Shown one piece after another: positions 2,951 to 47,175 of a stretch of 64,000 bases of DNA. The stretch spans positions 62,001 to 126,000 of the IMG/VR virus record IMGVR_UViG_3300025098_000012, one strand, 5' to 3'. The first letter of the stretch is position 1; the number at the start of each line of letters is the position of its first letter. A model generated the notes under the pieces. The model ran no database searches. It was given only the letters and a program-made list of their open reading frames with translations, and was not told where the DNA came from. Made by a program: the position numbers and the translations under genes.

Positions 2951-3421
2951 TTAAAGTAGGGTGCTTGGAGTTGATAGTGATTGATGGAGGGGGAACTTGA
3001 GCGTTTTGACCTTATCCTCGCCTTGATCCTCTAGTTTATCAAAGCCTTGTCGGACACGAGCTGTTAGCCCGACACAAGACCCATTTGCTTCATAGTCGGG
3101 GGCTACAGGCTGAGTCTCTGAAAAGGCACTTGCTAGTGTTTTCCAAGTCGGTTCTACTCCATTGAGTAGACGCTTGATGTTCTCGATTGCTCGACCCTTC
3201 TCAACCGTATACGATGCACGACCACTCGTGTTCACTCGGACAAAGAGGTTTGCGAGAGGGAGTCGTATAACATACTCCCACACATTCCATCTGTCTGAAG
3301 AGTCGGAGCGTCCATAGGCGAACTCGACCTCACCGATGACCTGTCCATCTCGGACGATCACATCTGTCTTATTGTAGTGGCTCTTATCGCCACGCTTGTA
3401 TCCTACTAGTTTTATATTCAT
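2951..3421 (-). CDS. Hypothetical protein (cassette gene)
   Basis: SD AAAGGAGA and motif copy at 3480-3496. Confidence 0.75.
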   Translation of the reverse strand: MNIKLVGYKRGDKSHYNKTDVIVRDGQVIGEVEFAYGRSDSSDRWNVWEYVIRLPLANLFVRVNTSGRASYTVEKGRAIENIKRLLNGVEPTWKTLASAFSETQPVAPDYEANGSCVGLTARVRQGFDKLEDQGEDKVKTLKFPLHQSLSTPSTLL

Positions 3422-3479
3422 GGTATCTCCTTTGAGAGTGAGAAAGGATGGAGGCTGACTTAGCCTCGCTACACCATGA

Positions 3480-3496
3480 TATAGATAAGGGGTTAC
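3480..3496 (-). promoter_or_regulatory. Outlying copy of the GTAACCCCTTATCTATA motif (degenerate copy at 2655-2671)
   Basis: TATAGATAAGGGGTTAC on +, followed on - by hairpin GAGGCT..AGCCTC and an SD. Confidence 0.85.
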
Positions 3497-15100: not shown

Positions 15101-18100
15101 TCTTTGGACTGACAAAGATGTTGCCCCTTTGTCAATCTTGTACTTAGGAATCACCATCCCACTTGATGTCCGAACTGTGCCATCTCCTCCGTTAGACTTT
15201 AAGGTCGTATAAGACACTTTCACAGATGTGGTACTCGCCACCTCAAAAGAGAAGCGTATTGTGTCTTGGCTGATACTATAAAGACTTGCGTTAATTTGTT
15301 CAGGTCCTACAAACACTGTCGGTGTGGCTAATAACTCTACTTCTTTACCTGTAGGGTTGTAGGTGAACTGAAAACCATCCACCCTTGTCGCTTCTTCTTG
15401 AATGACTACAAAGCCCATCGCTTCAATGACACGAACACCATTAGGATCATCTGTCGGTGTGTAAGATACCTCTACACCAACACCCTCCTCTAAAGGATCT
15501 TCAAAGCTGATTGCACCACTAGTTGCTTCAAATCTTGGGTTCGCTAACAGCTCTAAGAAATCATCAAAGGGATCGGGATCAAATGGGGTCGTGAGCGTTA
15601 AACTCAAATCCATCTCGGCTGTATCTACCAAGCCACTACGAGGCTTCCTTACAAAGACCACCTCACCATCTACCCAACTGCTGTTCGCTACTCCCATAGG
15701 GCTTTCAAAAACAACCCTGTTATCTGTGACTGTAAAACCCTTCTCTACATTCTCACCTTCTTTGGTATGACCGACACCTACTTCGTATTCTATTTCTCCT
15801 ACCTTAATGCGATATGATCCACTCGTGTAATGATCTCCACTCAACTCGTAAGGAGATAATAACACCTCGTCCCTTAACACAGTTAAAGGATATGCGTCAT
15901 CTCCCTTACGGATAAACAAAGTTGAGCTAGGCAACACCTTGTCAAAAGCAAGCGTTCCATACACCTTGTATATCTCTACTGCCTTACGCTCCAACACAGG
16001 TAGATCATCTAAAATCTCTCCCACTACCTTTGTAGGATCTGGTGTCTCCGTTTCCTCTAACCCCTCTCTATACCCTCTGTAAATCTTCCATCTCCCAAGC
16101 TGAATACCCAACGCTGAACTAAGCGTAAGCACACTCCCTGTGATCAACTCAATCTTAAAATAGTTTAATCCGTCATAAAAGAAATCACCCTGTCTCACCA
16201 AACTGAGATCCAACCCCAAGTCTAAATCGACCCCTGTTAATGACCCAACCTTTTGCCCCGATAAGACCTCTGAACCTAAACGATTGATTAAACGAGCTTG
16301 ACCCTCTAACCCATCACTCGGCAAGTCATAGTCAACCCCTTCTGTTAAAGGCTGAGTCGAGATAGTACCGTTCAACTGCTCTTGGGTGATCGTGATAGAT
16401 GTCGTACCTACCCTTAATCCAGATCCCAATGCCAAGCGTGATGTCTCTTGGTTCACCTTAGAACTTACTGTGCGACCTACAATCCAATGAAACCCATTCG
16501 GGTTGCCACCAAATGATGTCTCTATGTCCGTTTCCCCAAGTACCTTATCTCCTATCTTGAAAAACTTGCCGGCTTCATAACCTGTGAAATCAAAGCGTGG
16601 CTCAAACTGTAAAAACTGAAACGCTGTGCTACCACTTATGTCGGCTACCTTCTCCTCATCAAAAGAATAATAACCCTTGACTGATGAACGAGTTAAAACA
16701 AACTCAAGCCCTGTCTCCAAACTCGAACTCGGCACAAGACCAATAGACCTTAATGACTCAAACTCTCCTGTCGTTGATGGATGATCTACAACAGATCCAG
16801 AGTCCACTACCAAATAACCGTCTACTACTGAGACTCCCGAACCTACCACATTCTCCCCTGTAAACGATACCACTCCACCGTCCACCTTAAATGAACCACT
16901 CTTGCCCGATAAACCCAAAATGCTCATGTGCCTTAATCCCCCTCTGCTTAAAGCTACATGACCACCGAAAATCTTCTTCGTCTGATTAGACCAAGCACGA
17001 CTCAATACAACACTCGTTGTGCCTTGTACTAAATAACCACGATGGACTGATAGCCTCTTAGGGAGCTTCTCTACTAACTCCACAGGTAATGTGCGACCTA
17101 ACTCCACTAAACGAACATACATTCGCTCATATCTGTAATCCCACTTCAAACCCACTCCACTAGGTCTAAATGAACTCGCCACTCCACTAGGCTCTAATCC
17201 CGAACCATCTGGTATATCCATCTTCTCTACTAATGTTAAACCATTTACTCCTGCTCCCACACCAATAGGGGCATCACATAAAACCAAACCATCATAAATC
17301 ACAGGTGAGCTAGATAAAATCTTTCCACTGTCTAACGCTACCTTCACCACACCATATTCTGCGTCTACTAAATCACCCTCTGTCGCTACATACACCACAT
17401 CACTGTAGCCATATCCTGCGACTCTCAATAAAGGGTACTCATTTAATCTCGGCTGTGGCGATAAATAGTCCGACACCCCTACAACATTCGACTCAAATCC
17501 TCCAAGAGATCCAGATATATACAACACCTCCTTACCCACATGATCACTGCCATCCTTAAATAAAACCTTGCCCGATGGATTTAAGACCACACCCTCTGCT
17601 CCATTACTAAACGCACCATCTTCTTCTCCCTCCGCTACTACAGGGAAATCATCTCCATTTATCTCAAATACTGTGACTGACGCATCAGCTACATTACCAC
17701 CTCCTATCCTTAACTCTCCCTCCAATCCTGCTATGATGTCATCCTCACCACCTACCACCCCAACTACAATACCAGATCCTCCCCTTAATAATGACCAACC
17801 CCTGTTCTCATAATCAAATCTAACCCTACTCGCATCATTACGAGTCCACCAAAATAATCCACCACATACTCCCGAACCCTCCACACTATCCAAATTATCA
17901 CGAGCTGAATGAACCACCGTACCACCAAAGAAATGATCTAACGCAACACCATTCTCATCAAGCACCGAACTTAACCATACACGACTGTTCGTTAAGTAAT
18001 AATAGACTCCATCAATCGCTGTCTCAAATAACTTCTCAAAACTAACATCCACACTCTCAACACCTATCTCTCCATCTCCACTAGAAATCAAAGCATAAGA

Positions 18101-20494: not shown

Positions 20495-20707
20495 TTATAC
20501 TCCCATCATGTCTACTGTTTGGTTGAACACCACTTCACTCTCTTTCTTGAGTAGCGAGAGAGCTTCATTGATAGCGAGGTCAGTACACCCACGCATATTC
20601 TTTGCTGTGATGTATGGGCCGTTAACAGCCTCATTCAAGTGCCACAGCATCGCCTTAAGGGGAGTGCCTGTGAGTTTATCAAGTTTGAGATTTAAGTTTG
20701 TTCTCAT
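20495..20707 (-). CDS. Hypothetical protein (cassette gene)
   Basis: SD AAAGGAGA; motif at 20731-20747. Confidence 0.75.
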   Translation of the reverse strand: MRTNLNLKLDKLTGTPLKAMLWHLNEAVNGPYITAKNMRGCTDLAINEALSLLKKESEVVFNQTVDMMGV

Positions 20708-20743
20708 CTTTGTTCTCCTTTACAAGAGTGTATAAATAAGGGG

Positions 20744-20836
20744 TTACAGGTTCTTCATACGATAGTAGCTGACGATGAAGAGTCCGATGAGGCAGATGCT
20801 TACTACACCTGCGATGTCTAGTATTGTTGAGAGCAT
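20744..20836 (-). CDS. 30-aa membrane micropeptide MLSTILDIAGVVSICLIGLFIVSYYRMKNL
   Basis: SD AAAGGAGA; single hydrophobic helix; stop is the TAA inside the motif. Confidence 0.7.
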   Translation of the reverse strand: MLSTILDIAGVVSICLIGLFIVSYYRMKNL

Positions 20837-21145: not shown

Positions 21146-21667
21146 TTAGCGAGGGTTGTTGAACGCATCACGATCAACAGTCTCATCGAACTCTGTGATC
21201 TCGTGTCGGATGTAGCGAGGGAGATTAAGGTTCTGCTCGATGCAGTTTCGGATCTCCGTAAAGAGATGCTTGGCCTCTTTGAGTGGGTAGTGTCCATCAA
21301 CGATGACACCTCGAACATACTGACGACCATCTTCAGAGAAGAAGAAAGGGCTTCCATCTCTGCGGGTCAATCGCCCACTGTAGCTCTTAGGTCGGTTGGT
21401 GTTATTTCCTGCGAGGCTTGCGATGGTGCTAGGGATAAGACCCTTAGAACCAAAGATTACCTTATCGACATCGCTTGAGGTGCATTGAACACCTGCCTCA
21501 TTGATGAGGGCAGTTGCTTGCTCAAGACTGTTGTTTGAGGTGAACGCTTGGAGGCGAGTCAGACGCTCTTGCAACACATCCTTATAAGGGATGGTCATGT
21601 CGAGTACGACATTGTAAGCGTTGTCTCCATTGATGCGTCCTAGTTTTACTCTTGGGTGGTTAGTCAT
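21146..21667 (-). CDS. Hypothetical protein, paralogue of 23351-23956
   Basis: KGLI..YVRGVIV..IRNCIEQNLNL versus KGLL..HVRGIII..LKNAISKELDL. Confidence 0.75.
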   Translation of the reverse strand: MTNHPRVKLGRINGDNAYNVVLDMTIPYKDVLQERLTRLQAFTSNNSLEQATALINEAGVQCTSSDVDKVIFGSKGLIPSTIASLAGNNTNRPKSYSGRLTRRDGSPFFFSEDGRQYVRGVIVDGHYPLKEAKHLFTEIRNCIEQNLNLPRYIRHEITEFDETVDRDAFNNPR

Positions 21668-21743
21668 TCTTTTTCTCCATTGAGAGTGGTTGGTTGGTGG
21701 GCTTGGTTGCCCTCATGTAAGGTTATAGATAAGGGGTTACGCT

Positions 21744-22369: not shown

Positions 22370-22747
22370 TTATCCTTTCTCCATGTTCTTCATGTTGTTA
22401 ACGATGTCAGCGAAGTTGATTACTCCCTTCGTGTTCTCATTGCGTTCTTCAAGCTCCCGATTCAGTTGTATCAGCATAGCTTCTTCGATCTTGCCTATGA
22501 TCTCATCAGCATGATTGACGATCTCACCAAGAGGTGAAATGCTGAACTGAAAGTCTCCCTCTAGCCATTCGGGAAAGTCCATGTCTCCATCTTGCCAGTG
22601 ATCATATTTGTACTCGTAGAAGTACCGACCTGCTGGTACTAGATCATCGCCTTGAAAGACTTGACCTGTAGTGGTTGATGTTACTCGGAAGCCATCTGGG
22701 TTTCCCCCGATAGCCCACTCGATGATAGATTGTATGTCTTGTCTCAT
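22370..22747 (-). CDS. Hypothetical protein (cassette gene)
   Basis: Motif plus SD AAGGAGA. Confidence 0.75.
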   Translation of the reverse strand: MRQDIQSIIEWAIGGNPDGFRVTSTTTGQVFQGDDLVPAGRYFYEYKYDHWQDGDMDFPEWLEGDFQFSISPLGEIVNHADEIIGKIEEAMLIQLNRELEERNENTKGVINFADIVNNMKNMEKG

Positions 22748-22967
22748 ACATCTCCTTATCTAGTTGTCAAAGAAAGTTAGTGGGTGGTCTCTACCACCCT
22801 CGATACTAGTACATAGATAAGGGGTTACGACTCGCCTGTGGCCTAAACAGCAAACCTCTTAAGAGTTGAGGGATTTCGGGGGTTTAGCTACTCGTAACCC
22901 CTTATCTATAGAACAGTATCGGGGCTGAATGACTCACCCCACCAACCACTCCCCAATGGAGAACAAC

Positions 22968-23228
22968 ATGAACGCACTTTCCCCCCTAACATACGCAGAA
23001 GCCTCACATGGTGTAAGTCAGATAGTAAGCAAGCTCGGTTTCCCACTCTTTATGGGTGAGGCAGAGCGTAAGCCTACTGTCAAGGCTGTACGACAGCAAG
23101 TAGGAGCGTACTACAGCTCTCTTGCTAAAGAGAACAAACTCGACTGTCTCCATGCGTATGACGCAGAGAACAAGGCAGATCTGATCGAGAACGCTGTTGC
23201 CGAGCTTCTTGAGCGAGTCGAGGGCTAA
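22968..23228 (+). CDS. Hypothetical protein (cassette gene)
   Basis: Start re-assigned to the ATG after SD GGAGA. Confidence 0.75.
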   Translation: MNALSPLTYAEASHGVSQIVSKLGFPLFMGEAERKPTVKAVRQQVGAYYSSLAKENKLDCLHAYDAENKADLIENAVAELLERVEG

Positions 23229-31629: not shown

Positions 31630-32769
31630 TTACATATCAATCGGGCAAACATCAGAGGAAGCTCGGCTTTGAGCGTCTACCACATCAGATCGGAGGTAGG
31701 GGTCTATTGCTCCCTCAAGAGCATCTTGGTTATGCTTCTCATTGAGATGCCCCTTGATGATTGCAAAGGATCGCTTGAGAGCTTTTTTAAAGTCGGTGAT
31801 ACCCAAGTCCTCCATGACGGTGAGGCAAGCATGACCCCATTGTTTACCTTGACGCAAAGTTATTTCCATGCCCATGTCTTGCTCTTCTGCAACCTTACGG
31901 ATAGCTCGGTTGCAGTCCACCAAGAGCTTGATTTGGTCTTGGTCGAACATGGGAAACTCAGCCTGTACCACCATCCTCTCGAACTTGGGAGTTGGAGGAG
32001 GAGCGTAGATACCAACACAGCGAGACAGGAGACTAGAGTCTTTCATCTGAGTGATGTTGCCCCTACCTCCATCTCCATCAGCCCCACTATTGCTCGTAAA
32101 GTAGAAGCGAGTGTTAGGCAAGATAGTGAACATCTCACCTGTGATCGGGTTGGTCAACTTTTCTTTACCCAACTCAAGAGCTTGGCGAAGGATCTCAAGT
32201 TGGTCGGGTGTGGCTCGATCATAGTCAGAGAACAGGATCATGGCAGGTACTGTGATGGTCAGCATACCATCATCATTCACAACAGTGTATCCCACTTTCT
32301 CCATGCCCTTGACTGCATCAGAGAGCTGTTGCTCAGTAGCCCCTGTAAAGTCTCGCTTACACGACACTCCACGACAAGCCTTGAGCAGATCACCCTCGAC
32401 CTCTTTAGTCATCGTGCCACCTTTACCATCACCCACAAGAGTGGTTCGATAGATCCAGTCAACAGGGTTAGTTCCTTGCTTGAACGCAAAGCGAGCGAGA
32501 GGAAGATTGAAAGCGTGGCAAAACGCTTCAATCAAGATGTCTTTGCCTGTGCCTGCTGGCCCCGACACGATCAGATGGTTTATCTTACTGAAGAGAGATG
32601 CGTCCTGCATCCACCCCTCCCCACAGTCCTCGACATAGTTGTCGGGACGCTTGGCAGGGTCAAAGCCTGCGTTGATGATCTCCATAGCTGTTAGGGGCGA
32701 CATGGTGCGTTTCACACCACAAAAGAAGTTGTAGGCTAAAGTATATAGTTCGGGTCGCTGTCGAGACAT
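31630..32769 (-). CDS. MoxR/CobS-type AAA+ ATPase
   Basis: Walker A GPAGTGKD; atypical Walker B ILFSDYD; FYFTSN; LLSR; ITLRQ. Confidence 0.85.
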   Translation of the reverse strand: MSRQRPELYTLAYNFFCGVKRTMSPLTAMEIINAGFDPAKRPDNYVEDCGEGWMQDASLFSKINHLIVSGPAGTGKDILIEAFCHAFNLPLARFAFKQGTNPVDWIYRTTLVGDGKGGTMTKEVEGDLLKACRGVSCKRDFTGATEQQLSDAVKGMEKVGYTVVNDDGMLTITVPAMILFSDYDRATPDQLEILRQALELGKEKLTNPITGEMFTILPNTRFYFTSNSGADGDGGRGNITQMKDSSLLSRCVGIYAPPPTPKFERMVVQAEFPMFDQDQIKLLVDCNRAIRKVAEEQDMGMEITLRQGKQWGHACLTVMEDLGITDFKKALKRSFAIIKGHLNEKHNQDALEGAIDPYLRSDVVDAQSRASSDVCPIDM

Positions 32770-32822
32770 AGGGTTCTCCTTGTCGAAGTGGTTGCGTTGA
32801 TGTAGTTCTCATAAATAAGGGG

Positions 32823-32864
32823 TTACGGTTCAGAGCCTCGCTCCATGACCTTATACAATCTCAT
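32823..32864 (-). CDS. 13-aa mini-ORF MRLYKVMERGSEP between two motif copies
   Basis: GAGGGAG before the ATG; stop is the TAA of the next motif. Confidence 0.4.
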   Translation of the reverse strand: MRLYKVMERGSEP

Positions 32865-33055
32865 GAGGAAATGCTCCCTCACACTAGGATATAAATAAGG
32901 GGTTACACTATATACACATACGAATGATAGGATCTCCAACAAGAAGCGTAAGTACTTGATTACCTAGCAAAAAGCCTAAAGTGTAACCCCTTATCTATAG
33001 AGTAGTGTAGGGCGATCAAGCCTACCAACCAATCACTCCCACTAAGGAGAACAAA

Positions 33056-33223
33056 ATGAAATACCAAGTAATGCTCAACAACAAAGTCCTCTCAACACAT
33101 AAAAATCATGACCTCGCTGAGAAGGCTCTCAAGCGTTGGGAGAAGAAACACAAAGCTCAAGGCAAAGGTCGGGTCATCGGAGAGTTTTTGGTCGGTGGTA
33201 TCTACCACATCGAAGCTGTGTAA
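33056..33223 (+). CDS. 55-aa basic protein not in the ORF track (MKYQVMLNNK...YHIEAV)
   Basis: Full leader, SD AAGGAGA; stop inside the next motif. Confidence 0.8.
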   Translation: MKYQVMLNNKVLSTHKNHDLAEKALKRWEKKHKAQGKGRVIGEFLVGGIYHIEAV

Positions 33224-33313
33224 CCCCTTATCTAAGACCCTGTGTCGAGGACTGATTTTCCTCGCTTTCATATAAATACAAGACTACCCACTCACTCACC
33301 AAAGGAGATCCTT

Positions 33314-34459
33314 ATGGTACTTCCATCAAATCATGACCCCTCACAATACGCCAAGCGTGATCCCTTGAGCTTCGCCAAAGGTGCTTTTGAAGCACTTACC
33401 CTCATGTTCAAAGACATCAAGGTAGTGCGTCAAGGTGGAACTTTCGCAATCGCTAGTGCGTTCCCTTGGCTCGTTTTTGGTCGAGCCATCCAAGACACTA
33501 GATCGTCTGACTACTCTTCTAAAGACCAATGGCTCAAGGCGATCTACAGGGACGCTCAGTACAAGTTTCAGTCTAGCCCCGATAGTGCTACTCTGTTCCT
33601 CCCTGCTCCGTCAGCCGCAGGTGTGACAACAATCAACGCTAGTGCAGGTGTTGGTGGTGGTGTGCATGAAGCAGGTCATGCGATCTGCGACTGTGCAAAT
33701 GGACGCTTCCCTACCTATGAGCAGTTTCGCTCAAGGGTCGGTCGCCACCTCGATATGACCATCCCATACCATGAGTCTAACCTCCCTAAATGGGTCAATG
33801 TGACTGCTGATATGCGTTTAGAGCCAGGAATGGCTCTAGCCTATCCAGAGGTCGAGCATCGCTTCCATGCAATCCAAACTTGGTGTCATGGACTCGAAGC
33901 TGAGGTTCGAGGTCAAAAAGTACCTAGCGACTTTCTCATGGCTCTTAGAGATGCAGGTAAGGGTTGGGTATCAGATGAGTCAAAGGCTGTCTATGCAGAG
34001 TATCAGCAAGACGCTCGTGATCTCGTGGAATACCTCAAGCCTATATGGTCTGAGCTAAAGCCTCGAAACACCGATTGGGCTGACTCGGCTCATCTCCCTG
34101 TCTATGCCGCTGTGGAGGTCATCAACGCTCTACACAAGCTCTTAAAAGAACCACCACCCGAAGGTAAGGGTAAGGGTAAAGGTAAAGGCAAAGGTAAAGG
34201 CAAAGGTGATCCTCAAGGCAAGGGTGATCCTCAAGATCCAAGTGATCCTCAAGATCCAAGTGATCCTCAAGATCCTCAACAGTCAGCAGGAAAGTCTCCT
34301 ATGAGCCTTGATGACATCAAGCGTCTACTAGATGGAGAAGGGGAAGCCCTTGACCCTAACAGTGCAATGAAGCAAGAGGTCAATAAGAACAAGCAACTCC
34401 TCGACCATGAGTTGTATATCCCCAACGGAGCAAAGCCAATCTATCGGAAGTTCATCTGA
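33314..34459 (+). CDS. CobT-N-like / HExxH metallopeptidase-like partner of the AAA+ ATPase
   Basis: VHEAGH; NVTADMRLE; low-complexity GK and DPQDPS linker. Confidence 0.7.
   Translation: MVLPSNHDPSQYAKRDPLSFAKGAFEALTLMFKDIKVVRQGGTFAIASAFPWLVFGRAIQDTRSSDYSSKDQWLKAIYRDAQYKFQSSPDSATLFLPAPSAAGVTTINASAGVGGGVHEAGHAICDCANGRFPTYEQFRSRVGRHLDMTIPYHESNLPKWVNVTADMRLEPGMALAYPEVEHRFHAIQTWCHGLEAEVRGQKVPSDFLMALRDAGKGWVSDESKAVYAEYQQDARDLVEYLKPIWSELKPRNTDWADSAHLPVYAAVEVINALHKLLKEPPPEGKGKGKGKGKGKGKGDPQGKGDPQDPSDPQDPSDPQDPQQSAGKSPMSLDDIKRLLDGEGEALDPNSAMKQEVNKNKQLLDHELYIPNGAKPIYRKFI
34160..34280 (+). repeat. In-frame microrepeats (GGTAAA/GGCAAA; GATCCTCAAGATCCAAGT)
   Basis: Seen directly. Confidence 0.85.
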
Positions 34460-34513
34460 TAGGTTGGGTACTCCGTAACCCCTTATTTGTCTACTCTTGA
34501 AAGGAGACTTATC

Positions 34514-35326
34514 ATGCCAAATAAATATGACTCTCAAGTGTTGTCCTCGCTCAATCGAGGTACAAATAAAGTAAGGCGAGCCTTAGAGGTTGCCAATCAG
34601 AAGGTCGGGCAGAACTTCATCGGTGCTAGACTCAATACTCGAAGCTCTGCCTTAGTCAATACTCTTACAAGCGTCCGTCAAGGTCAAATCAATCGGGATC
34701 GGTACATCAAGATGTATCAGAAGCCCCAAGTACGAGCGGCCTTCTCGTTCGCTATAGATGGTAGCGACTCAATGAACTACAACGCAGGTACACCATCGGG
34801 AACTTATTGGAAAGAGTGTATCTCACTCATACATGGGCTTCACACAGCGTGTCAAGGCATCGGTGTTGACTCGTCATCAGCGTTGGTCATGTACACCTAT
34901 GGCGACCGAGATGTACCTATGGCTTCATCGAACTACAAGCCTGTAGCGAACATCATCAAAGGTCTAGGTGATAAATGGCAAAAAGATAATCCCGATAAAC
35001 TCCGTAAGAAGCGTTGCAATGGTGGTACTTCAATCATCTGCTATGCTGAGACAGCACTCGACATGGTAGCTCAATCTAATGCTACTCATAAGATCGCCTT
35101 TTTCCTTACTGATGGTGAGGACTATGAGAAGGCTTACCTAGAGAGCATGAGACAGCAAGCTCAAGCTCAAGGAATAAAGTTGGTCGGCATCGGCTTGGGT
35201 GTCAGTGGTGAACGACTCCCTAATGGCATCAGTGGTGCGAATGCTCTTGAGATCGCTCCTCGAATGATGGATCACCTAGAGAAAATCATCAAGTCCTCTA
35301 CAGGTGTAGAGGCTAACGACAAATAA
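34514..35326 (+). CDS. vWA-domain protein (CobT-C-like)
   Basis: MIDAS DGSDS; GGTS; FFLTDGE; LVGIGLG. Confidence 0.85.
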   Translation: MPNKYDSQVLSSLNRGTNKVRRALEVANQKVGQNFIGARLNTRSSALVNTLTSVRQGQINRDRYIKMYQKPQVRAAFSFAIDGSDSMNYNAGTPSGTYWKECISLIHGLHTACQGIGVDSSSALVMYTYGDRDVPMASSNYKPVANIIKGLGDKWQKDNPDKLRKKRCNGGTSIICYAETALDMVAQSNATHKIAFFLTDGEDYEKAYLESMRQQAQAQGIKLVGIGLGVSGERLPNGISGANALEIAPRMMDHLEKIIKSSTGVEANDK

Positions 35327-35410
35327 TCTTATAAGACAAACCACACCCCCCCACAAAAACAAACTCCCCTAGCACTTCCCCCCCATACTCACCACAGGAG
35401 AACAAAGCCA

Positions 35411-35755
35411 ATGGCTAACATCCGTACCCTCATCAAGTCAGCCCTCCAATCTGACCTTTCTGGTGTGCGTGTCAAAGAACTCGCCCTCAGCATCGGTGCA
35501 ACTTACTCTGCCACTTACCAAGCTCTCCAATCCATGATGTCTGAGGGGCAAGTCGATAAGGTTGCTCGTGGTGTCTTCGCCCTTTCAGAGATCCCGAAGT
35601 TCACTACAGCCGAGTGCATCTCCCTTCTTCAGTCTTTGGAGAACCAAGAGATCGCTGTTGAGATCGCTCGTGAGGAACTTGATCGGGCAGAGGCACAGCT
35701 TCGAGCTGTGAAGCGTACCATCAAGTCTACCATGATGTCTGCGTTCGAGGACTAA
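35411..35755 (+). CDS. Winged-helix plus coiled-coil protein
   Basis: VKELALSIGATYSATYQALQSMMSEGQVDKVARGVF. Confidence 0.75.
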   Translation: MANIRTLIKSALQSDLSGVRVKELALSIGATYSATYQALQSMMSEGQVDKVARGVFALSEIPKFTTAECISLLQSLENQEIAVEIAREELDRAEAQLRAVKRTIKSTMMSAFED

Positions 35756-35812
35756 GTAACCCGAAATCTATCTGACCCCATCACCGAACCCACTCCCACA
35801 GGAGAACCAAAC

Positions 35813-36046
35813 ATGGAAACACTGAACCTAACCCGAACCACACCTCTTGGCGACCACCTCAATCGTAATAAGGAAGAGGGCTTGCCCTTCAAAGTCTATG
35901 CCTATAAGGACTTGGTGTCTGTCGAAACAACACTACCTTTTGATAGGAATAGGACGGTCATCGACATCTACAACGCTGACGGTACGAAGATCACAAGGGA
36001 ATCAACCATGAAGCACATCCTACACACTCTTATTCGGGAAGGCTAA
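35813..36046 (+). CDS. Hypothetical protein
   Basis: SD AGGAGA; degenerate motif upstream. Confidence 0.7.
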   Translation: METLNLTRTTPLGDHLNRNKEEGLPFKVYAYKDLVSVETTLPFDRNRTVIDIYNADGTKITRESTMKHILHTLIREG

Positions 36047-36138
36047 TCCACCCCTCCCCCACAGGAGAACAAACTACCAAGATGAAATTGAAGCTAAGGC
36101 TCAACAGTAATCGACCTCTGCCCTTAGAGGCAGTCGAT

Positions 36139-36197
36139 AGGAACAGACGATTGGTGTTGTTCTGATGTGATGGAGGGTTCGACTCCCTCATGTTCCT
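36139..36197 (+). ncRNA. tRNA-like element (acceptor stem plus T arm, no proper anticodon arm)
   Basis: AGGAACA...TGTTCCT pairing; GAGGG-TTCGACT-CCCTC T arm. Confidence 0.45.
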
Positions 36198-36294
36198 TTA
36201 TAGATTTCTAACTTGTGGCCCGAAGCTGTAACCCCTTATTTATAACTTAGTATCGGGGCAATGAAGCCCACTCACTCTGACAAGGAGAACCAAC

Positions 36295-36819
36295 ATGAAC
36301 AGCGTAAACATCACAGCCGACAACTTTCTCTCAGCACTCCTCGCCCCTTTCGGTGGCAAGGACACCCACAGCGAGTCGGGAGAGCCTCTCCCAAGCTCAA
36401 CTTCAAAGGCATGGACTTTCACGCTCCATAACACAGAGCGTGACACTCACCTCACCTTCAAGTCTCGCCGCCCGAAGGGGTGGACGGTCGATAGCCCCGT
36501 CTTGATCGACCTCATGGTCGGTACGGACAACAGCTCTGACTTCGGATTCATCGGGAGCGTTAGCTCTCGTGGGTTCTACAAGGCATCACCTAAGAGCAAG
36601 GTGGACGCTGACCGTAAGGCTGTCGCTGATCGTACCCTCGTGTGGCTTCTAACCAAGCTCAACAATGGACAGGAGCTTCCCGAAGCTCTTGAGATGAAGG
36701 GTGCTTCTAAGTGCTGTCGCTGTGCAAGGAAGCTCACCAACCCCGACTCGGTAAATGATGGGATGGGTCCTATCTGTCGCAAGAAGGCTAACGACAGCAA
36801 GGTTAGTCGAGGGGCTTAA
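36295..36819 (+). CDS. DUF6011-like Zn-ribbon protein
   Basis: CCRCARKLTNPDSVNDGMGPIC. Confidence 0.8.
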   Translation: MNSVNITADNFLSALLAPFGGKDTHSESGEPLPSSTSKAWTFTLHNTERDTHLTFKSRRPKGWTVDSPVLIDLMVGTDNSSDFGFIGSVSSRGFYKASPKSKVDADRKAVADRTLVWLLTKLNNGQELPEALEMKGASKCCRCARKLTNPDSVNDGMGPICRKKANDSKVSRGA

Positions 36820-36991
36820 GGTCTAGGGTGGGTCGGAGCTGAAAAGCTCTTAGAAGAGCATTTAAGAGCTTAATGGAAAAAGGAATAACGACTATGTTTT
36901 CGGGGGTTTGGAGTTCGTAACCCCTTATTTATAGAGTAGTGTAAGGGGAACAATCCCCACCAACCAATCACTCCAACAAGGAGAACAAGAC

Positions 36992-37294
36992 ATGATCGAC
37001 TTAACCAACTACCCAATGCTCAACAAGCGTCAGAACACCCCCTTCTTCGCAGACCTCACCAATGAGGATCGTGTGATGAATGTCAACGGAAGCCCCATGA
37101 GCTTGGGTGTGTGGAACATGATCGTGAGCTACCGAGATCTCAAGCTCTGGTGTCGGCTCGGCATGAAGCCCCATCGTGGGTGGAAGGTGAGCCACGCTAA
37201 GGCTTACTTCGGCATCAAGGGCAACAAGGACAAGCTCTTGAGCGAGTTTGAAGCACTCAAAGCTGAGGTCGATGAGATCCTCGGACGAGGCTAA
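36992..37294 (+). CDS. Hypothetical protein (cassette gene)
   Basis: Full leader plus SD. Confidence 0.8.
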   Translation: MIDLTNYPMLNKRQNTPFFADLTNEDRVMNVNGSPMSLGVWNMIVSYRDLKLWCRLGMKPHRGWKVSHAKAYFGIKGNKDKLLSEFEALKAEVDEILGRG

Positions 37295-37375
37295 CAATCG
37301 GGAGGCGTAACCCCTTATCTATACCATAGTGTAAGAGGGATTGACCCTCACCAACTACTCAAGGAGAAAAAAAGA

Positions 37376-37696
37376 ATGGCTACCTACATCAACAAAGAGA
37401 TCGCAGGCTTCGCTTCTACCCTCATCATCGACATCGCAGAGACTATGGAGGGCCTCTGTCTTTGGGCTAAGATCAAGGGAGGGAAGATCAATGAGGATCG
37501 CACCTCTTATGAGGAGATCACTGTCGAGGACATGGAGGAGGGCATCACCAAGACCCTCACGATCCGAGACATCGAGCTTGCAACGAACAAGCTCTCCCTT
37601 CGTGAGATCAAGGCTCTCCGAGCAGGTGACTTTGATTGGCTCATGGCTGACAAGGTGCTTCAGCTCGCATTTCACCGCAAGGTGATCTACGGATAA
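37376..37696 (+). CDS. Hypothetical protein (cassette gene)
   Basis: Full leader plus SD; C-terminal AD.VLQ.A....VIYG. Confidence 0.8.
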   Translation: MATYINKEIAGFASTLIIDIAETMEGLCLWAKIKGGKINEDRTSYEEITVEDMEEGITKTLTIRDIELATNKLSLREIKALRAGDFDWLMADKVLQLAFHRKVIYG

Positions 37697-37889
37697 GAGA
37701 GGTCGGACTGAGGTAATGTAAGAGGGGAGCAATCCTTGAGCGTAAGGTTAAGAGGGGCAACTTAATCCAGAAGCTAGACATCTAGGGGTGGCGAGGTCTG
37801 AGCGTTATAGTGGGATAAGTCGTAACCCCTTATCTATAAGATTGTAAGAGGAACGATCCTCTTAGACTACACTCCAGAAAGGGAGAACA

Positions 37890-38486
37890 ATGCCAAAGGC
37901 ACACAACATCTTCTTAGCGTCCGTCCTCGTGATCATGGGGTTCGGCATCAACGCAGGTAAAAACGCTTTTGAGGGCAGGGCTGTTTACCACAGTTCTTGT
38001 TCGATCAGTTCTAATCCTGTGCAGTATCAGCATCATACAGGCACGATAAGCGTGAGGAGATGGTGGTATGTGGACACGACCACAGGAGCTAAGATCAAGG
38101 CAACTAAGGCACAACATGAGGCTTGTGAGAGCGTGAAAGTTCTCATGTCGAGTGAGGCTGAAGTTGCTGAATCTGAGAGGCTTGAAGATGTCGCCAATAA
38201 CTGGATCATCTTCTCGTTCGCTTGGTTTGGTCTTGGGTTCTTGGTTGAGTTCGCCACCACCTACCTTGCTAAGAGGCGAGAGCGTCTTGAGTGGGAGAGA
38301 GCTGACCGAGAGCGAGAGCTTGAGTGGAAGCGAGACTGTGAGATGTGGGAAGCGAAGCGAGAAGATGAGAAAGCCGAGAGGCAGAGGTCTAAGACAGCGA
38401 ATGAAGAACGAGCAAGACGAAAGGCTGAGAGGGGAGCAATCCTTGAGGCTAGAAGGCTTGCGAACTTAGAGCGTAAGAAAGGATAA
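37890..38486 (+). CDS. Membrane protein with charged C-terminal coil
   Basis: Two hydrophobic segments; E/R-rich tail. Confidence 0.75.
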   Translation: MPKAHNIFLASVLVIMGFGINAGKNAFEGRAVYHSSCSISSNPVQYQHHTGTISVRRWWYVDTTTGAKIKATKAQHEACESVKVLMSSEAEVAESERLEDVANNWIIFSFAWFGLGFLVEFATTYLAKRRERLEWERADRERELEWKRDCEMWEAKREDEKAERQRSKTANEERARRKAERGAILEARRLANLERKKG

Positions 38487-39470: not shown

Positions 39471-39559
39471 GTGTTCTCCTTTAGAACTTGTTGGTGATGC
39501 TCCTCTTTAAGTAAGGGGTTACATTAGCCCGTCCTTAGCTCCATAAAGAGGAGGAGGGT

Positions 39560-39584
39560 TAAATAGGAAGTGAGTTCCTATTTA
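39560..39584. repeat. 25-bp palindromic site TAAATAGGAA-GTGAG-TTCCTATTTA, copy 1
   Basis: 10-bp inverted arms, 5-bp asymmetric core; identical to 40142-40166. Confidence 0.95.
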
Positions 39585-39644
39585 GGGTTGTAACCCCCTA
39601 TTTATGAGGGTGCATCAACCACTCACTCCCAATGGAGACAAAAC

Positions 39645-41195: not shown

Positions 41196-41804
41196 TTACC
41201 CACGAGGGAGCATACCCTCCCTTGAGTCAAAGTTATACTCCTCGATGATCTTGTTGATCCTCTCAAGCTGAGTAGCTACCCACTCTTGATTGCCCCCACC
41301 TTTAGTGTCGTAGTGGTGGTCGAGGAGGTGGAGATTTTGGTCAATGCTGAACAGCTCCGAACTGAGCCTCCAGTTCGCATCATCGTAGTCCTTGACGACC
41401 TGTGGTGGCAAGATCTCAACCTCCCACGCTTGATCTCTGAGGAGGTCATTAAGCTCATCCTCTCGCTCGTCCTCATCTAAGGTGGGGTCGAGCGATGCCT
41501 TAGCCGCCTCCTCATCAAACCACTCCCGATTGATGTCCCAAGGGTACACACCTTCCATGACGCAGTGGTCGCAAAGCTCCTCGTCATGGTCGTACTCGTC
41601 ATATCCGACACAGTATGATGCCATGTATCGTCCTGCCCCATTACACTCAGTGCAGACCTTAGCCTCAGCGTAGCGAGATGCTTGGAGTTTAGCCTTAGCC
41701 TCCTCTAGCTTCGCCTTGAGGGTGGGGAGGGCCTTGATCTCGCTCTCGATTTGAGCGATGAGGACTCGCTCGGAAGTTTTGATGTCTTGTAGTGATGGCA
41801 TCAT
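41196..41804 (-). CDS. Coiled-coil plus DnaJ-type Zn-finger protein
   Basis: CTECNGAG...CDHC; start re-assigned after GGAGA. Confidence 0.75.
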   Translation of the reverse strand: MMPSLQDIKTSERVLIAQIESEIKALPTLKAKLEEAKAKLQASRYAEAKVCTECNGAGRYMASYCVGYDEYDHDEELCDHCVMEGVYPWDINREWFDEEAAKASLDPTLDEDEREDELNDLLRDQAWEVEILPPQVVKDYDDANWRLSSELFSIDQNLHLLDHHYDTKGGGNQEWVATQLERINKIIEEYNFDSREGMLPRG

Positions 41805-41884
41805 ATTGATGTCTCCATTAGGAGTGAGTGAGGTGCGTGATGATTCTGCACCTCTTACATAAGGATATAGATAAGGGGTTACGC

Positions 41885-42671: not shown

Positions 42672-42805
42672 AAGCATAAGTCCTTTCATAGTTGTCAAAG
42701 AGTTAGTAGGGCAACCACTGTCGCCCTCGATACTGTTCAATAAATAAGGGGTTACGCCAACCTGTAACCCCTTATTTATTACAAAGCATCAACCAAGGAG
42801 AACCT

Positions 42806-42968: not shown

Positions 42969-43610
42969 ATGACCTTGACCCAAAAAATAAACGGGGTTCG
43001 CAAGATGATCCCGACACCACATCACAAGACTGCGTACAAGACCAAAGGGTCTATGCAGTCCTGGTATGACCGACACACCAAACTTTTCACTGAGCTTGCT
43101 GAGGAGATAGGCTTTGAGGTCAGTAAAGAGACAGGCACTCTATCCTCTTTTACGGGCACTATCTTGAACATCAAGAAGAGTGGGTTTGGGGACTTTAAGC
43201 TCACCTTGAGATGGGCTAAGGATGGTTTATCTACGGTGCGTCTATGTGGCAACAGCACTGACCATACAGTCTACCCTTATCAGACATGGCGAGGGTACGA
43301 GAAGCCTCAGTCTCATAATGATGCTCACTTGGGTAACTGGTTCCTCAAGTTGATACGATTGGATTGGGTCGCTGGTAACAGACCGAACATCCATCAGATC
43401 AAGGTCGATGATGAGATAGTGTTTAGTGGCACACCAGGTGGTGGTGGTCAACGCACACGAGCTAAGGTTGTAGGGTATGGTGGAGCATGGGGTCGTAGCT
43501 ACTTCAAGGTGTCGCTATTAGAGGAGCGAGGGGTGAAGAAGATCAAACCTGTGGGAACGGTCATGGAGGTACACTATAACTGCATCATCCACCACGAGGG
43601 CAAAGCGTAA
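42969..43610 (+). CDS. Hypothetical protein with C-terminal SH3-like segment
   Basis: IKVDDEIVF..RAKVV; stop inside the motif. Confidence 0.75.
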   Translation: MTLTQKINGVRKMIPTPHHKTAYKTKGSMQSWYDRHTKLFTELAEEIGFEVSKETGTLSSFTGTILNIKKSGFGDFKLTLRWAKDGLSTVRLCGNSTDHTVYPYQTWRGYEKPQSHNDAHLGNWFLKLIRLDWVAGNRPNIHQIKVDDEIVFSGTPGGGGQRTRAKVVGYGGAWGRSYFKVSLLEERGVKKIKPVGTVMEVHYNCIIHHEGKA

Positions 43611-45937: not shown

Positions 45938-46164
45938 GTCTCTCCAGAGGGGGGGGTCTTATATATGAGCGTTTTTGAAAAAGCGATGTTGGATAAGTGA
46001 TCTCATATATTATTTGAGTTTGGATTTTTTGGGTTGATTTTCTAACCCCCTTTTTGAAGCGAAAGAGGAATATGCGAGCAATGACGGACTGGTGGAACTG
46101 TTGTGTGCATCATGGGTAGATTTGTAACCCCTTATTTATAGACTCTTGAAAGGAGAACCATATT

Positions 46165-46767
46165 ATGAAATGGACAAAGATGGAGGCGATTGAGTCTCGC
46201 CAACAAGAAACGCTAGTGAAGAGAATGGGAGAGGTTCAACAAGACCCTCCGTATCCTTTGAGGGATATAACCTATGTGTACAAGAATGAGACTAGTTGTT
46301 CGTATGGTACACATTCTGGTCGCATAGAGCGTTGGTACTTTAAAGGGGATCGGTTACAGGATCGCCACTCGATGTATCGTTTATGGATTTACAAAGATGG
46401 AGGGGAGGTGTCTTTCTTTGATAGCTTTTACAAGCTCACCTACTGTAAGGATTGGGTTGAGCATGACTTAAGAGAGGGAGACTTATTAAGGTTCTCCCAT
46501 TTCAACGAGGGGTTTTCGCCTCATGGTACGGTGTACCGAGTGCAGTTGGACAAGTACCCTCACCTCACCTATGACGATGTTCTCAACTGGGTCTTAGCGA
46601 AAGAGAAGGCTTTGATGGGATATAGGGGTCAATACATGGAAGTGTATGGTGGTGATAACCCTAGAGTTGAGTTTTTCCATCATGTTTTAAAGAGGGTAGC
46701 TAAGGTCAAGCATATGGATTTAGTGGACGAAGTAAACGAGTGGGGATCAAATCTTATAAAGGCATAG
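46165..46767 (+). CDS. Hypothetical protein
   Basis: Motif plus SD AAAGGAGA. Confidence 0.75.
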   Translation: MKWTKMEAIESRQQETLVKRMGEVQQDPPYPLRDITYVYKNETSCSYGTHSGRIERWYFKGDRLQDRHSMYRLWIYKDGGEVSFFDSFYKLTYCKDWVEHDLREGDLLRFSHFNEGFSPHGTVYRVQLDKYPHLTYDDVLNWVLAKEKALMGYRGQYMEVYGGDNPRVEFFHHVLKRVAKVKHMDLVDEVNEWGSNLIKA

Positions 46768-46839
46768 TGTCATTTATTTTAGAATAGCATACGAAGTAGT
46801 AACCCCTTATTTATTAACTCTTGAAAGGAGAACATTAGT

Positions 46840-47175
46840 ATGATGACACTAACAGTTAAAGACAATGGAGTTCGTGTAGCAAACCCCTCTTATAGAGGTC
46901 AGAGAGTCCACGCTAATGAGATCAAGCAGTATCATTCAACTTTACTTAAAGAGTTGGGATTTAAAAAGCAAAGCTCAAGATGGATACACAAATCAACAAT
47001 GCCCTTTAAGGCATCCTCGTTATGTGTGGTTTGGAGAGATTCTCCTCATACCTTGAGCGTACAGCGAGGAAACTTTTTAAAGCACATTGAAGTACATGAG
47101 AATGCCGACTTACATGACTTTGTGTCTAATGTTTTGCAGTCGATAAGGGATGTTTGGACAGAGGGTGCGAAGTAA
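46840..47175 (+). CDS. Member of the IR.VW paralogue family
   Basis: LTVKDNGVRVANP...KELGF...SIRDVW. Confidence 0.75.
   Translation: MMTLTVKDNGVRVANPSYRGQRVHANEIKQYHSTLLKELGFKKQSSRWIHKSTMPFKASSLCVVWRDSPHTLSVQRGNFLKHIEVHENADLHDFVSNVLQSIRDVWTEGAK

What the first reader, a model, noticed from the sequence alone, without database searches (positions are those of the whole stretch)
32983..37375. Conserved leader architecture with a covarying 5' hairpin
Seen: the leader is motif, N3, TAGTRT, hairpin, ACCAACC(AAT)CACTC, AGGAGA, ATG. Leaders at 32983 and 36917 are near-identical except for the hairpin (TAGG..CCTA versus GGGGA..TCCCC). Others use GAGGG..CCCTC (37307), AAGAGGA..TCCTCTT (37822) and GAGGTGC..GCACCTC (41866). 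Pairing is conserved while sequence is not. A short class lacks the hairpin (motif then ACTCTTGAAAGGAGA at 34475, 46124, 46799). Inference: a structured mRNA 5' end for stability plus a C/A-rich ribosome standby site.
Basis: partly seen in the sequence, partly recalled or inferred. Interest (0 to 1): 0.65.

Follow-up and report, generated by a model that had tools for sequence, protein, structure and literature searches.

The report
Phage promoter-leader cassettes with 5' hairpin
An uncultured marine giant phage places the same promoter-plus-leader cassette in front of about 45 small genes, and a third of the copies carry a position-fixed, sequence-variable RNA hairpin at or near the predicted mRNA 5' end; this is a new example of a known phage design, comparable to the T7 gene 10 leader.

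Summary
The window lies in a 226.7-kb marine huge-phage contig. GTAACCCCTTATYTATA occurs 32 times in the window (4 expected) and 45 times in the genome. It is always intergenic and points at a gene. A scan of related viral contigs gave 187 distinct copies. The layout is: 17-nt core, N3, weak TARTRT box, an optional GC-rich hairpin starting 28-31 nt from the first base of the core, a G-free C/A-rich linker, a CTCY element, AAGGAGA, ATG.

Hairpins occur in about a third of copies, and 39 different stems sit at the same place. They exceed shuffles and arm-swapped chimeras. Orthologous and paralogous leaders show compensatory changes, although part of the variety comes from swapping of whole hairpin modules.

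No RNA data exist. Sequence logic puts the transcription start at or before position 28: the shortest leaders place the Shine-Dalgarno sequence there, and position 28 is 85-89% purine. The hairpin is therefore transcribed and probably 5'-terminal.

CTCY pairs weakly with the Shine-Dalgarno GGAG. This makes the standby-site idea more coherent but does not prove it.

No phage RNA polymerase or sigma region 2 was found, so what reads the promoter is unknown. Verdict: a new member of a known kind, of moderate interest.

The parts
32983..33058 (+). Full cassette. Core 32983-32999. TAGTGT box 33003-33008. Hairpin 33007-33025 (GTAGG/CCTAC; if the RNA starts at 33010 the stem is GGGC/GCCU). G-free linker ACCAACCAATCACTCC. 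SD 33044-33050. ATG 33056.
   Evidence: (MFE -10.7, z -2.8)
33220..33316 (+). Cassette with a long leader. Core 33220-33236; its TAA is the stop codon of the upstream gene. Hairpin CGAGGA/TCCTCG 33246-33264. SD 33302-33308. ATG 33314.
   Evidence: the ortholog in L074 has GAGGG/TCCTC
34475..34516 (+). Short-class cassette: core followed by TACTCTTGA, then AAGGAGA at 34501-34507 and ATG at 34514. No hairpin and no linker.
36228..36297 (+). Cassette. Core 36228-36244. Box TAGTAT. Hairpin GGGC-AATGAA-GCCC 36256-36269. SD 36282. ATG 36295.
   Evidence: orthologs carry TGAGGA/TCCTCA or GGGGA/TCCTC at the same place
36917..36994 (+). Cassette. Core 36917-36933. Hairpin GGGGA-ACAA-TCCCC 36945-36958. 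SD 36978. ATG 36992.
   Evidence: (MFE -13.2, z -3.4)
37307..37378 (+). Cassette. Core 37307-37323. Hairpin GAGGG-ATTGA-CCCTC 37335-37349. SD 37361. ATG 37376.
37822..37892 (+). Cassette. Core 37822-37838. Hairpin TAAGAGGA-ACGA-TCCTCTTA 37845-37864. SD AGGGAGA 37880. ATG 37890.
   Evidence: the ortholog in L051 has GGGTTGA/TCAGCCC and the one in L045 has none
41802..41882 (-). Cassette on the minus strand. Core 41866-41882. Hairpin GAGGTGC-11 nt-GCACCTC 41830-41854. ATG 41804.
   Evidence: (MFE -17.3, z -4.3); the ortholog in L034 has GGGGTGC/GCACCCC, a compensatory A-U to G-C change
42675..42755 (-). Cassette. Core 42739-42755. Hairpin AGGGCGAC-AGTG-GTTGCCCT 42708-42727. It sits back to back with the + strand cassette at 42764.
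22745..22828 (-). Cassette. Hairpin GGGTGGT-AGAG-ACCACCC 22782-22799. It is a paralog of the 42755 leader with three compensatory pair changes.
22894..22970 (+). Cassette. Hairpin GGGG..CCCC 22921-22940. Divergent partner of the 22828(-) cassette.
21665..21740 (-). Cassette. Hairpin GGGC-AACCAA-GCCC 21699-21712.
3419..3496 (-). Cassette. Hairpin GAGGCT-AAGTC-AGCCTC 3451-3467.
46124..46167 (+). Short-class cassette with AAGGAGA at 46150 and ATG at 46165. Two more short-class cassettes lie at 46799-46842 (+) and 20705-20747 (-).
32767..32906 (-). Two promoters in tandem. The core at 32890-32906 is followed by the hairpin GAGGGA/TCCTC. A second core at 32810-32826 has a hairpin-less CA-rich leader to the ATG at 32769.

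Best explanation
Each element is a phage-specific promoter fused to a modular 5' untranslated leader. It drives mostly small accessory genes of unknown function in an uncultured marine huge phage.

The promoter is the invariant 17-nt core GTAACCCCTTATYTATA plus a box at fixed spacing, T21-a-R-T-R-T26. Transcription most likely starts at position 27-28 of this frame (inferred). T16-A17-nnn-T21 reads as a TAnnnT -10-like hexamer, and position 28 is 7 nt after it and is 85-89% purine.

The RNA then carries up to three modules:
1. An optional GC-rich stem-loop with a 4-8 bp stem and a 3-12 nt loop. It starts 0-3 nt from the inferred 5' end. By analogy with the T7 gene 10 and ompA leaders it would shield the 5' end from 5'-end-dependent decay (inferred).
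2. A G-free C/A-rich single-stranded linker of about 16 nt.
3. CTCY, 4-6 nt upstream of AAGGAGA, which can form a weak helix with GGAG. The ribosome-binding site would then be lightly masked beside an open landing strip (inferred).

The short class fuses the promoter directly to the Shine-Dalgarno sequence. The factor that reads the promoter is unidentified. The phage and its complete relative show no RNA polymerase or sigma region 2, so host core polymerase plus a phage factor is the likeliest route.
For: Motif number, orientation and intergenic position come. The logo of 187 distinct copies shows about 2 bits at positions 1-12 and 14-16, a weak box at 21-26, and purine at position 28.

The Shine-Dalgarno sequence never starts before position 27, and about 10 genuine leaders pile up at 27-28. 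Hairpin-less and short classes keep the same core and box, so the hairpin is an insert downstream of the promoter. Stem starts cluster at positions 28-30.

Hairpin enrichment: 75% versus 34% +/- 4.5% in shuffles, and MFE -8.44 versus -5.71 +/- 0.20. There are 39 distinct stems among 57 hairpins. In the arm-swap test real stems score 15.5 against 10.7, and 0 of 2000 permutations reach the real value.

Orthologous genes carry different stems at the same place, including the compensatory change GAGGTGC/GCACCTC to GGGGTGC/GCACCCC. In an alignable sub-family, 97.4% of cells are paired, 3 of 7 pairs change on both sides, and slid controls give 28-68% paired. RNAfold finds the 5' hairpin in 12 of 12 window leaders.

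The linker is 2.7% G. CTCY is present in 120 of 150 motif leaders against 20 of 114 other genes. The probability that the Shine-Dalgarno sequence is paired is 0.87 against 0.67. The C/A-rich leader is absent from genes without the motif.

No PF00940, PF00562, PF00623 or PF04542 was found in G000 or in the 100%-complete relative G001. Sigma-70-type promoters are not enriched.

A more distant relative, LR745208.1, uses sigma-28-like promoters with the Shine-Dalgarno sequence 6 nt after the -10 box. This shows that mRNAs starting at the Shine-Dalgarno sequence are normal in this phage lineage.
Against: No transcript data exist, so the start site, half-life and translation effects are all untested.

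Two thirds of the sites lack a clear hairpin, so it is not essential. Against natural coding sequence the enrichment is modest. The sense strand does not fold better than the antisense strand, and the G-U versus C-A mismatch count is uninformative, so RNA-level selection is not proven by strand asymmetry.

If the start were at position 18, as in T7-like geometry, the hairpin would sit 10-12 nt from the 5' end. That is too far for classical end protection. In the short class the retained ACTCTTGA would be transcribed only in that case.

The helix masking the Shine-Dalgarno sequence is weak. Because the Shine-Dalgarno sequence is invariant, it cannot be tested by covariation.
Confidence: 0.55

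Rival explanations
1. The box plus hairpin is a transcription-control signal rather than a stabiliser. It could be a promoter-proximal pause, attenuator or nut-like site (boxA-like TAGTRT plus boxB-like hairpin). A phage elongation factor would read it, for example the NusG/KOW-like protein encoded next to the sigma-4-like protein.
For: The box sits at fixed spacing and is followed 1-4 nt later by a hairpin. The phage encodes a NusG/KOW-like 172-aa protein. Canonical terminators are not enriched, so read-through control is conceivable.
Against: Loop sequences and lengths vary freely, from 3 to 12 nt, whereas boxB loops are sequence-specific. The hairpin is absent from most sites. No U-tract follows it. 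Almost every gene in the cluster has its own promoter, so antitermination is little needed.
Confidence: 0.13
2. The cassettes are mainly recombination modules like the PeSLs of T4-type phages. Repeated promoter-plus-stem-loop units would serve as homology patches that shuffle ORFans, and the G-run/C-run stem would be kept for that DNA-level role.
For: The same hairpin module, for example GGGC-AATGAA-GCCC or TGAGGA-ACGA-TCCTCA, sits before unrelated genes, while orthologs carry different modules. Leaders 32983 and 36917 are near-identical. The driven genes are clade-specific ORFans, with no tblastn hit in LR745208.1. PeSL stems are also Gn-loop-Cn (PMC2839356, PMC4122927).
Against: This rival does not exclude an RNA role. 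In PeSLs the stem-loop lies upstream of a sigma-70 promoter and terminates transcription. Here it lies downstream of a non-sigma-70 motif and has no U-tract. Point compensatory changes indicate selection on pairing itself.
Confidence: 0.12
3. The hairpin is part of the promoter and transcription starts downstream of it, as at N4 virion-polymerase hairpin promoters. An unrecognised phage polymerase would read it.
For: Several giant ORFs (3037, 2180 and 1874 aa) have no family or PDB match, so a cryptic polymerase cannot be excluded. An A or C usually follows the 3' arm.
Against: The hairpin is optional, while the core and box keep the same spacing. A start tied to the hairpin would therefore move 15-25 nt between classes. 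Stems and loops are not conserved, unlike in N4. In the short class the Shine-Dalgarno sequence begins at position 27-28, so the start must lie at or before there. No DxDGD-type catalytic motif appears in a plausible context.
Confidence: 0.05
4. The stems are by-products of composition. A G-rich start region followed by a C-rich leader would pair by chance, with no selected structure.
For: Swapped arms still reach a score of 12 or more in 44% of chimeras. Natural coding sequence reaches similar loose scores in 62% of cases.
Against: Real arms match far better than swapped ones: 46% versus 9% reach a score of 16 or more, with z = 8.6. Stem position is fixed. Compensatory changes occur in alignable leaders.
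Confidence: 0.07

Closest known systems
Phage T7 class III promoter plus gene 10 (phi10) leader
   Same: An invariant 17-nt phage promoter ending in TATA. A G-rich 5' stem-loop with a C-rich 3' arm at the start of the mRNA. An unstructured spacer and a strong AAGGAG ribosome-binding site. The unit is repeated before many genes. (The T7 details are from general knowledge, not tested here.)
   Different: No T7-like single-subunit polymerase was found in this phage or in its complete relative. Positions 18-20, which would be +1 to +3 in T7 geometry, are the least conserved. Genes lie on both strands. The hairpin is optional and its sequence is free.
5'-terminal stem-loop mRNA stabilisers (E. coli ompA hp1, B. 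subtilis aprE and ermC leaders)
   Same: A short, stable stem-loop at or near the 5' end whose structure rather than sequence matters.
   Different: Here the distance to the 5' end is only inferred, and no half-life data exist. The host and its RNases are unknown.
PeSL cassettes of T4-type phages (PMC2839356, PMC4122927)
   Same: Repeated promoter plus Gn-loop-Cn stem-loop units flank small ORFans in plastic genome regions. Modules appear to be exchanged between sites.
   Different: PeSLs use sigma-70-like early promoters, and their stem-loop lies upstream and terminates transcription. Here the motif is not sigma-70-like. The stem lies between the promoter and the ribosome-binding site, and no U-tract follows it.
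Ribosome standby sites next to structured ribosome-binding sites (de Smit and van Duin model)
   Same: A single-stranded G-free stretch lies directly upstream of a Shine-Dalgarno sequence that is predicted to be paired.
   Different: The predicted helix is only 4 bp, about -3.4 kcal/mol for the local 24 nt, and may not limit initiation. No functional test exists.
Phage N4 virion-polymerase hairpin promoters and lambda nut boxB
   Same: A short hairpin lies close to a phage promoter.
   Different: In those systems the loop and stem bases are conserved and essential. Here both vary and the hairpin is dispensable.

Membership tests
T7-type promoter/leader (single-subunit polymerase system) | Highly conserved promoter of about 17-23 bp placed directly upstream of genes, in the gene's orientation | tested here: met
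   45 copies in the genome and 187 distinct copies in relatives, with about 2 bits per position over positions 1-12 and 14-16
T7-type promoter/leader (single-subunit polymerase system) | Cognate T7-like RNA polymerase encoded by the phage | tested here: not met
   PF00940 was not found in G000 or in the 100%-complete relative G001. The search had no positive control, so the sensitivity for very divergent enzymes is unknown.
T7-type promoter/leader (single-subunit polymerase system) | Conserved purine start immediately after the promoter core | tested here: not met
   Position 18 is 38% pyrimidine and positions 18-20 carry 0.08-0.17 bits. The purine-rich position is 28.
5'-terminal stem-loop mRNA stabiliser | Stem-loop within a few nucleotides of the mRNA 5' end | not testable with these tools
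   No RNA runs hold the phage. By inference the start is at or before position 28 and stems begin at positions 28-31.
5'-terminal stem-loop mRNA stabiliser | Pairing conserved while sequence varies | tested here: met
   39 distinct stems. Arm-swap z = 8.6. Compensatory changes in orthologs and paralogs. The caveat is module swapping and small alignable sets.
5'-terminal stem-loop mRNA stabiliser | Lengthens mRNA half-life | not testable with these tools
   This needs experiments.
PeSL (promoter-early stem-loop) cassette | Sigma-70-like early promoter with an AT-rich upstream region | tested here: not met
   There is no conserved -35 and nothing is conserved upstream of position 0. Sigma-70-type sites number 13 against 20 expected.
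PeSL (promoter-early stem-loop) cassette | Stem-loop upstream of the promoter acting as a terminator | tested here: not met
   The stem lies downstream of the motif and is followed by ACCAACC-type sequence, not a T-run.
PeSL (promoter-early stem-loop) cassette | Associated with ORFans and modular exchange | tested here: inconclusive
   The driven genes mostly lack Pfam hits and lack homologs in LR745208.1. Hairpin modules are shared between unrelated leaders. Breakpoints were not analysed.
N4-type hairpin promoter | Hairpin obligatory, with conserved loop and stem bases, and the start downstream of it | tested here: not met
   The hairpin is present in 57 of 167 sites. Loops are 3-12 nt of free sequence.
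Ribosome standby site | Shine-Dalgarno sequence sequestered in a helix and flanked by a single-stranded platform | tested here: inconclusive
   The predicted probability that the Shine-Dalgarno sequence is paired is 0.87 against 0.67 for other genes. The linker is 2.7% G. The helix is weak and this is prediction only.
Any curated RNA family (Rfam 15) | Match at the gathering score | tested here: not met
   No matches in the 64-kb window.

The most novel reading that the evidence does not exclude
The 17-bp core is read by a phage protein made of two tandem sigma-region-4-like HTH domains. This 188-aa protein is always encoded after a clamp-loader gene and a NusG-like gene. It would recruit host RNA polymerase without any sigma region 2 or -35 contact. 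That would define a new phage transcription-initiation system in uncultured marine huge phages, with the 5' hairpin as part of its RNA output design.
Probability: 0.12. Interest if true: 0.7.

Novelty: new member of a known kind. Interest (0 to 1): 0.42.

Why it matters
The finding gives a ready-made regulatory map for an uncultured clade of marine huge phages. The map consists of 45 promoters in this genome, and the same core was found in 86 stretches of related viral contigs. It marks which genes are fired individually, mostly small ORFans. It also offers a natural series of leaders with and without a 5' stem-loop for testing how phages tune mRNA stability and translation. Finally, it raises a concrete question: which factor reads a promoter that matches no known sigma consensus, in phages that seem to encode no polymerase of their own?

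Tried and rejected
- **Covariance model or R-scape on all hairpin leaders.** MAFFT cannot register stems that differ in offset, length (4-11 bp) and loop (3-12 nt) (alignments A1 and A6). A model fitted to hand-picked hairpins would be circular. I used alignment-free tests and one alignable sub-family instead.
- **Sense versus antisense folding as proof of an RNA-level element.** This failed. The antisense strand folds better because it is G/U-rich. Counting G-U against C-A internal mismatches was uninformative.
- **A start about 7 nt after the TARTRT box (ECF-like or MotA-like geometry, start at position 33-35).** Rejected, because it would place the Shine-Dalgarno sequence of about 20 short leaders upstream of the start.
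- **T4-late reading of TATAAATA.** Most copies are just the reverse complement of the T-variant of the core. The remaining copies belong to a second class that, in its functional orientation, reads TAGTTTATTTATAC.
- **Search for a polymerase or sigma factor.** Pfam and PHROG scans of 22 large proteins. Genome-wide searches for PF00940, PF00562, PF00623 and PF04542. A DxDGD scan. PDB sequence searches of the three largest unknown ORFs. All negative.
- **More orthologs of the gene at 36295.** The search returned only close relatives with stems already seen.
- **Literature search for the motif string.** No papers.

Full report
**Context.** The window is bases 62001-126000 of a 226,698-bp IMG/VR virus record estimated to be 73% complete. 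The only sequencing runs that hold it are marine DNA metagenomes. Its portal protein is 71% identical to that of the uncultured 485-kb phage LR745208.1. It is distantly related to Tunturiibacter phage Tunturi_5 (37%) and Bacillus phage G (26%). No close phage genome exists in GenBank. The genome encodes a family A DNA polymerase, UvrD-, RecD- and SNF2-type helicases, ribonucleotide reductase, a portal and a baseplate protein. Several giant ORFs have no match.

**Checking the observation.** GTAACCCCTTAT with up to 2 mismatches occurs 32 times in the window, against 4.1 +/- 2.0 in shuffles. With up to 1 mismatch it occurs 45 times in the genome, on both strands. Nearly every copy lies in an intergenic gap and points at the next gene. 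The copies are densest at window 20-47 kb, where almost every small gene has its own. Structural-gene blocks lack the motif.

A scan of IMG/VR for the 17-mer found 86 stretches in related contigs, among them a 375,691-bp genome rated 100% complete. Pooling these gave 187 distinct copies. Their logo (the 45 copies of this genome alone) shows these features, counting from the first G of the core as position 1:
- Y at position 0.
- Near-invariant GTAACCCCTTAT at positions 1-12.
- Y-T-A-T-A at positions 13-17.
- Three unconserved positions, 18-20.
- A weak box T-a-R-T-R-T at positions 21-26.
- A purine at position 28 in 85% of all copies and 89% of this genome's copies.

The site given as 41866 is the low end of a minus-strand copy. 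Leaders 32983 and 36917 are near-identical outside the hairpin.

**Leader classes.** A Shine-Dalgarno sequence and start codon could be assigned to 167 copies. Of these, 57 have a clear stem starting at positions 24-31. Another 28 were scored as short, with the Shine-Dalgarno sequence at or before position 32; a few of these are hairpins misread as Shine-Dalgarno sequences. The remaining 82 have a C/A-rich leader without a clear stem. In the window the split is 12, 6 and 12. Stems are 4-8 bp (one is 10 bp) and loops are 3-12 nt. The 5' arm is G-rich and the 3' arm is C-rich.

**Is the hairpin more than chance?** I ran five tests.
- *Shuffles.* Among 77 leaders with the Shine-Dalgarno sequence at positions 50-75, 75% have a stem score of 12 or more. 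Dinucleotide shuffles give 34% +/- 4.5%. Mean MFE is -8.44 against -5.71 +/- 0.20 kcal/mol.
- *Natural sequence.* Against natural coding sequence of the same length the excess is smaller. With Watson-Crick pairs only, it is 62% against 38%, and 25% for the DNA just upstream of the motif.
- *Arm swap.* The 57 hairpins comprise 39 distinct stems. When 3' arms are swapped between leaders, the mean score drops from 15.5 to 10.7, and 0 of 2000 permutations reach the real value. This test is partly circular because the leaders were chosen for having a stem.
- *Orthologs.* Orthologous genes in related phages carry different stems at the same place. The gene at 36295 has GGGC/GCCC, TGAGGA/TCCTCA or GGGGA/TCCTC. 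The gene downstream of 41882 has GAGGTGC/GCACCTC or GGGGTGC/GCACCCC, which is a clean A-U to G-C compensation. Some orthologs have no hairpin at all.
- *Alignable sub-family.* In six alignable leaders, 97.4% of cells pair and 3 of 7 pairs change on both sides. The covariation score is 0.486 against 0.326 in shuffles, reached by 5 of 500. Sliding the partner columns gives 28-68% paired.

The same hairpin module also recurs before unrelated genes. Part of the diversity therefore comes from module exchange, not point mutation. ViennaRNA predicts the 5' hairpin in all 12 window leaders tested, with z-scores of -1.0 to -4.3.

Two tests did not help. The antisense strand folds better than the sense strand because it is G/U-rich. 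Internal G-U mismatches are not commoner than C-A mismatches. The sequence therefore does not prove that the element acts as RNA.

**Where does transcription start?** No RNA data exist, so this is inference. Four observations bear on it.
- The Shine-Dalgarno sequence never begins before position 27. About ten genuine leaders begin it at 27-28 and about ten more at 29-32. The start must therefore lie at or before position 28.
- The core-to-box spacing is fixed in all classes, and the hairpin is an optional insert after the box. A promoter of fixed geometry then places the hairpin inside the transcript.
- Positions 18-20 are the least conserved and position 18 is 38% pyrimidine. This speaks against T7-like geometry, in which the start would be at 18. 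Position 28 is 85-89% purine.
- T16-A17-nnn-T21 fits TAnnnT, and position 28 is 7 nt after it, the usual distance for a bacterial holoenzyme. All three letters are present in 81 of 187 copies.

A start at 27-28 puts the stem 0-3 nt from the 5' end. This is the geometry known to block 5'-end-dependent decay; that last point is established knowledge and was not tested here.

The relative LR745208.1 lacks the motif. It has 49 sigma-28-like sites (CTAAAR-N10-14-RYRCCGATAR), and in 25 of them the Shine-Dalgarno sequence starts 6 nt after the -10 box. Messages that begin at the Shine-Dalgarno sequence are thus normal in this lineage, which matches the short class here.

**The rest of the leader.** Between the hairpin and the Shine-Dalgarno sequence lies a linker of mean length 16 nt, with A 33%, C 44%, T 20% and G 2.7%. 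Genes without the motif lack this G-free leader.

The 3' end of the linker is CTCY, 4-6 nt before GGAG. It is present in 120 of 150 motif leaders and in 20 of 114 other genes. RNAfold pairs it with GGAG in 10 of the 12 window leaders tested. The ensemble probability that GGAG is paired is 0.87 against 0.67 for other genes. Local MFE is -3.4 against -1.8 kcal/mol.

It gives the standby-site idea something to act on, but it is weak. Because the Shine-Dalgarno sequence is invariant, it cannot be tested by covariation.

**What reads the promoter?** No T7-like polymerase, multisubunit beta or beta-prime domains, or sigma region 2 were found in this genome or in the complete relative. The T7-like search had no positive control. 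Sigma-70-type promoters are not enriched.

A sigma-region-4 search found a 188-aa protein at G000 162213-162778 with two tandem sigma-4-like HTH domains (Pfam 24.8 bits). It is encoded directly after a NusG/KOW-like protein, and in two more distant relatives the gene before that pair is a clamp-loader gene. It is conserved at 47-96% identity in about 50 protein clusters. Its AlphaFold model has pLDDT 82.6. The model resembles -35-binding domains of ECF sigma factors best, but only with weak Foldseek E-values. It is a candidate reader of the 17-bp core and nothing more than that.

**Comparison with known systems.**
- *T7 class III promoter with the gene 10 leader.* This is the closest in design, but the cognate polymerase and the conserved +1 are missing here.
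- *PeSL cassettes of T4-type phages.* These share the repeated promoter-plus-Gn/Cn-stem unit before ORFans. However, their stem lies upstream of a sigma-70 promoter and terminates transcription.
- *N4 hairpin promoters and lambda nut sites.* Both need conserved loops, and these loops are free.
- *Rfam and the literature.* Rfam has no match, and the motif string appears in no paper of the library.

**Verdict.** The feature is a real, class-specific promoter-leader cassette with an optional, structurally conserved stem-loop that is probably 5'-terminal. Its function as a stabiliser and standby platform is plausible but untested. It is a new member of a known kind.

Noticed in passing
window 58992-59004 (and G000 16042, 133478, 153163, 153977, 165125, 167849, 170912, 216321, 219097): A second promoter-like class, TAGTTTATTTATAC in its functional orientation (reverse complement TATAAATAAACTA). 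There are about 10 copies. It shares the TTATTTATA core with the main motif but has a different upstream half. It may mark another temporal class.
   Followed up: partly
G000 153977, 165125, 167849, 219097 (outside the window): A conserved repeat of about 45 nt (tttttctccattggtttaaggttaaagagatcacttatgagaggg) abuts the class-2 motif. It is the shared leader of those genes, read on the other strand.
   Followed up: no
window 36173-36189: GAGGGTTCGACTCCCTC looks like a tRNA T-arm (5-bp stem and a TTCGACT loop). It lies after a tiny ORF. ARAGORN and Rfam call nothing there. It could be a tRNA fragment or a terminator-like hairpin.
   Followed up: partly
G000 162213-163301 (L123:1195-2281, minus strand; outside the window): A 188-aa protein with two tandem sigma-70 region-4-like domains lies next to a 172-aa NusG/KOW-like protein. 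In relatives both lie directly after a clamp-loader gene. The arrangement is conserved across the clade. These are candidate transcription factors of the phage.
   Followed up: partly
LR745208.1 (loci L129-L148): This 485-kb relative lacks the motif. It carries 49 sigma-28/FliA-like promoters (CTAAAR-N10-14-GCCGATAG) before small genes, with the Shine-Dalgarno sequence 6 nt after the -10 box. No sigma region 2 is encoded in the phage, so it may use the host flagellar sigma factor.
   Followed up: partly
window 22812-22910, 32890-32999, 39506-39606, 42739-42780: Back-to-back divergent promoter pairs. At 42739-42780 the two cores are only 8 nt apart. There is also a tandem pair on the minus strand at 32906 and 32826.
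   Followed up: no
window 33220-33223, 43607-43610: The TAA inside GTAACC serves as the stop codon of the upstream gene, so the promoter overlaps the end of the preceding gene.
   Followed up: no
window 31633-35323: Three motif-driven genes encode an AAA_5 (MoxR-like) ATPase (minus strand), a 381-aa protein with a low-complexity KG/DPQ repeat at about 34165-34280, and a VWA-domain protein. A MoxR-VWA pair is an unusual phage accessory module.
   Followed up: partly
window 9152-18262 (minus strand): A 3037-aa ORF with no Pfam, PHROG or PDB sequence match. It has a strongly negative GC skew (-0.43 at 16-18 kb).
   Followed up: partly
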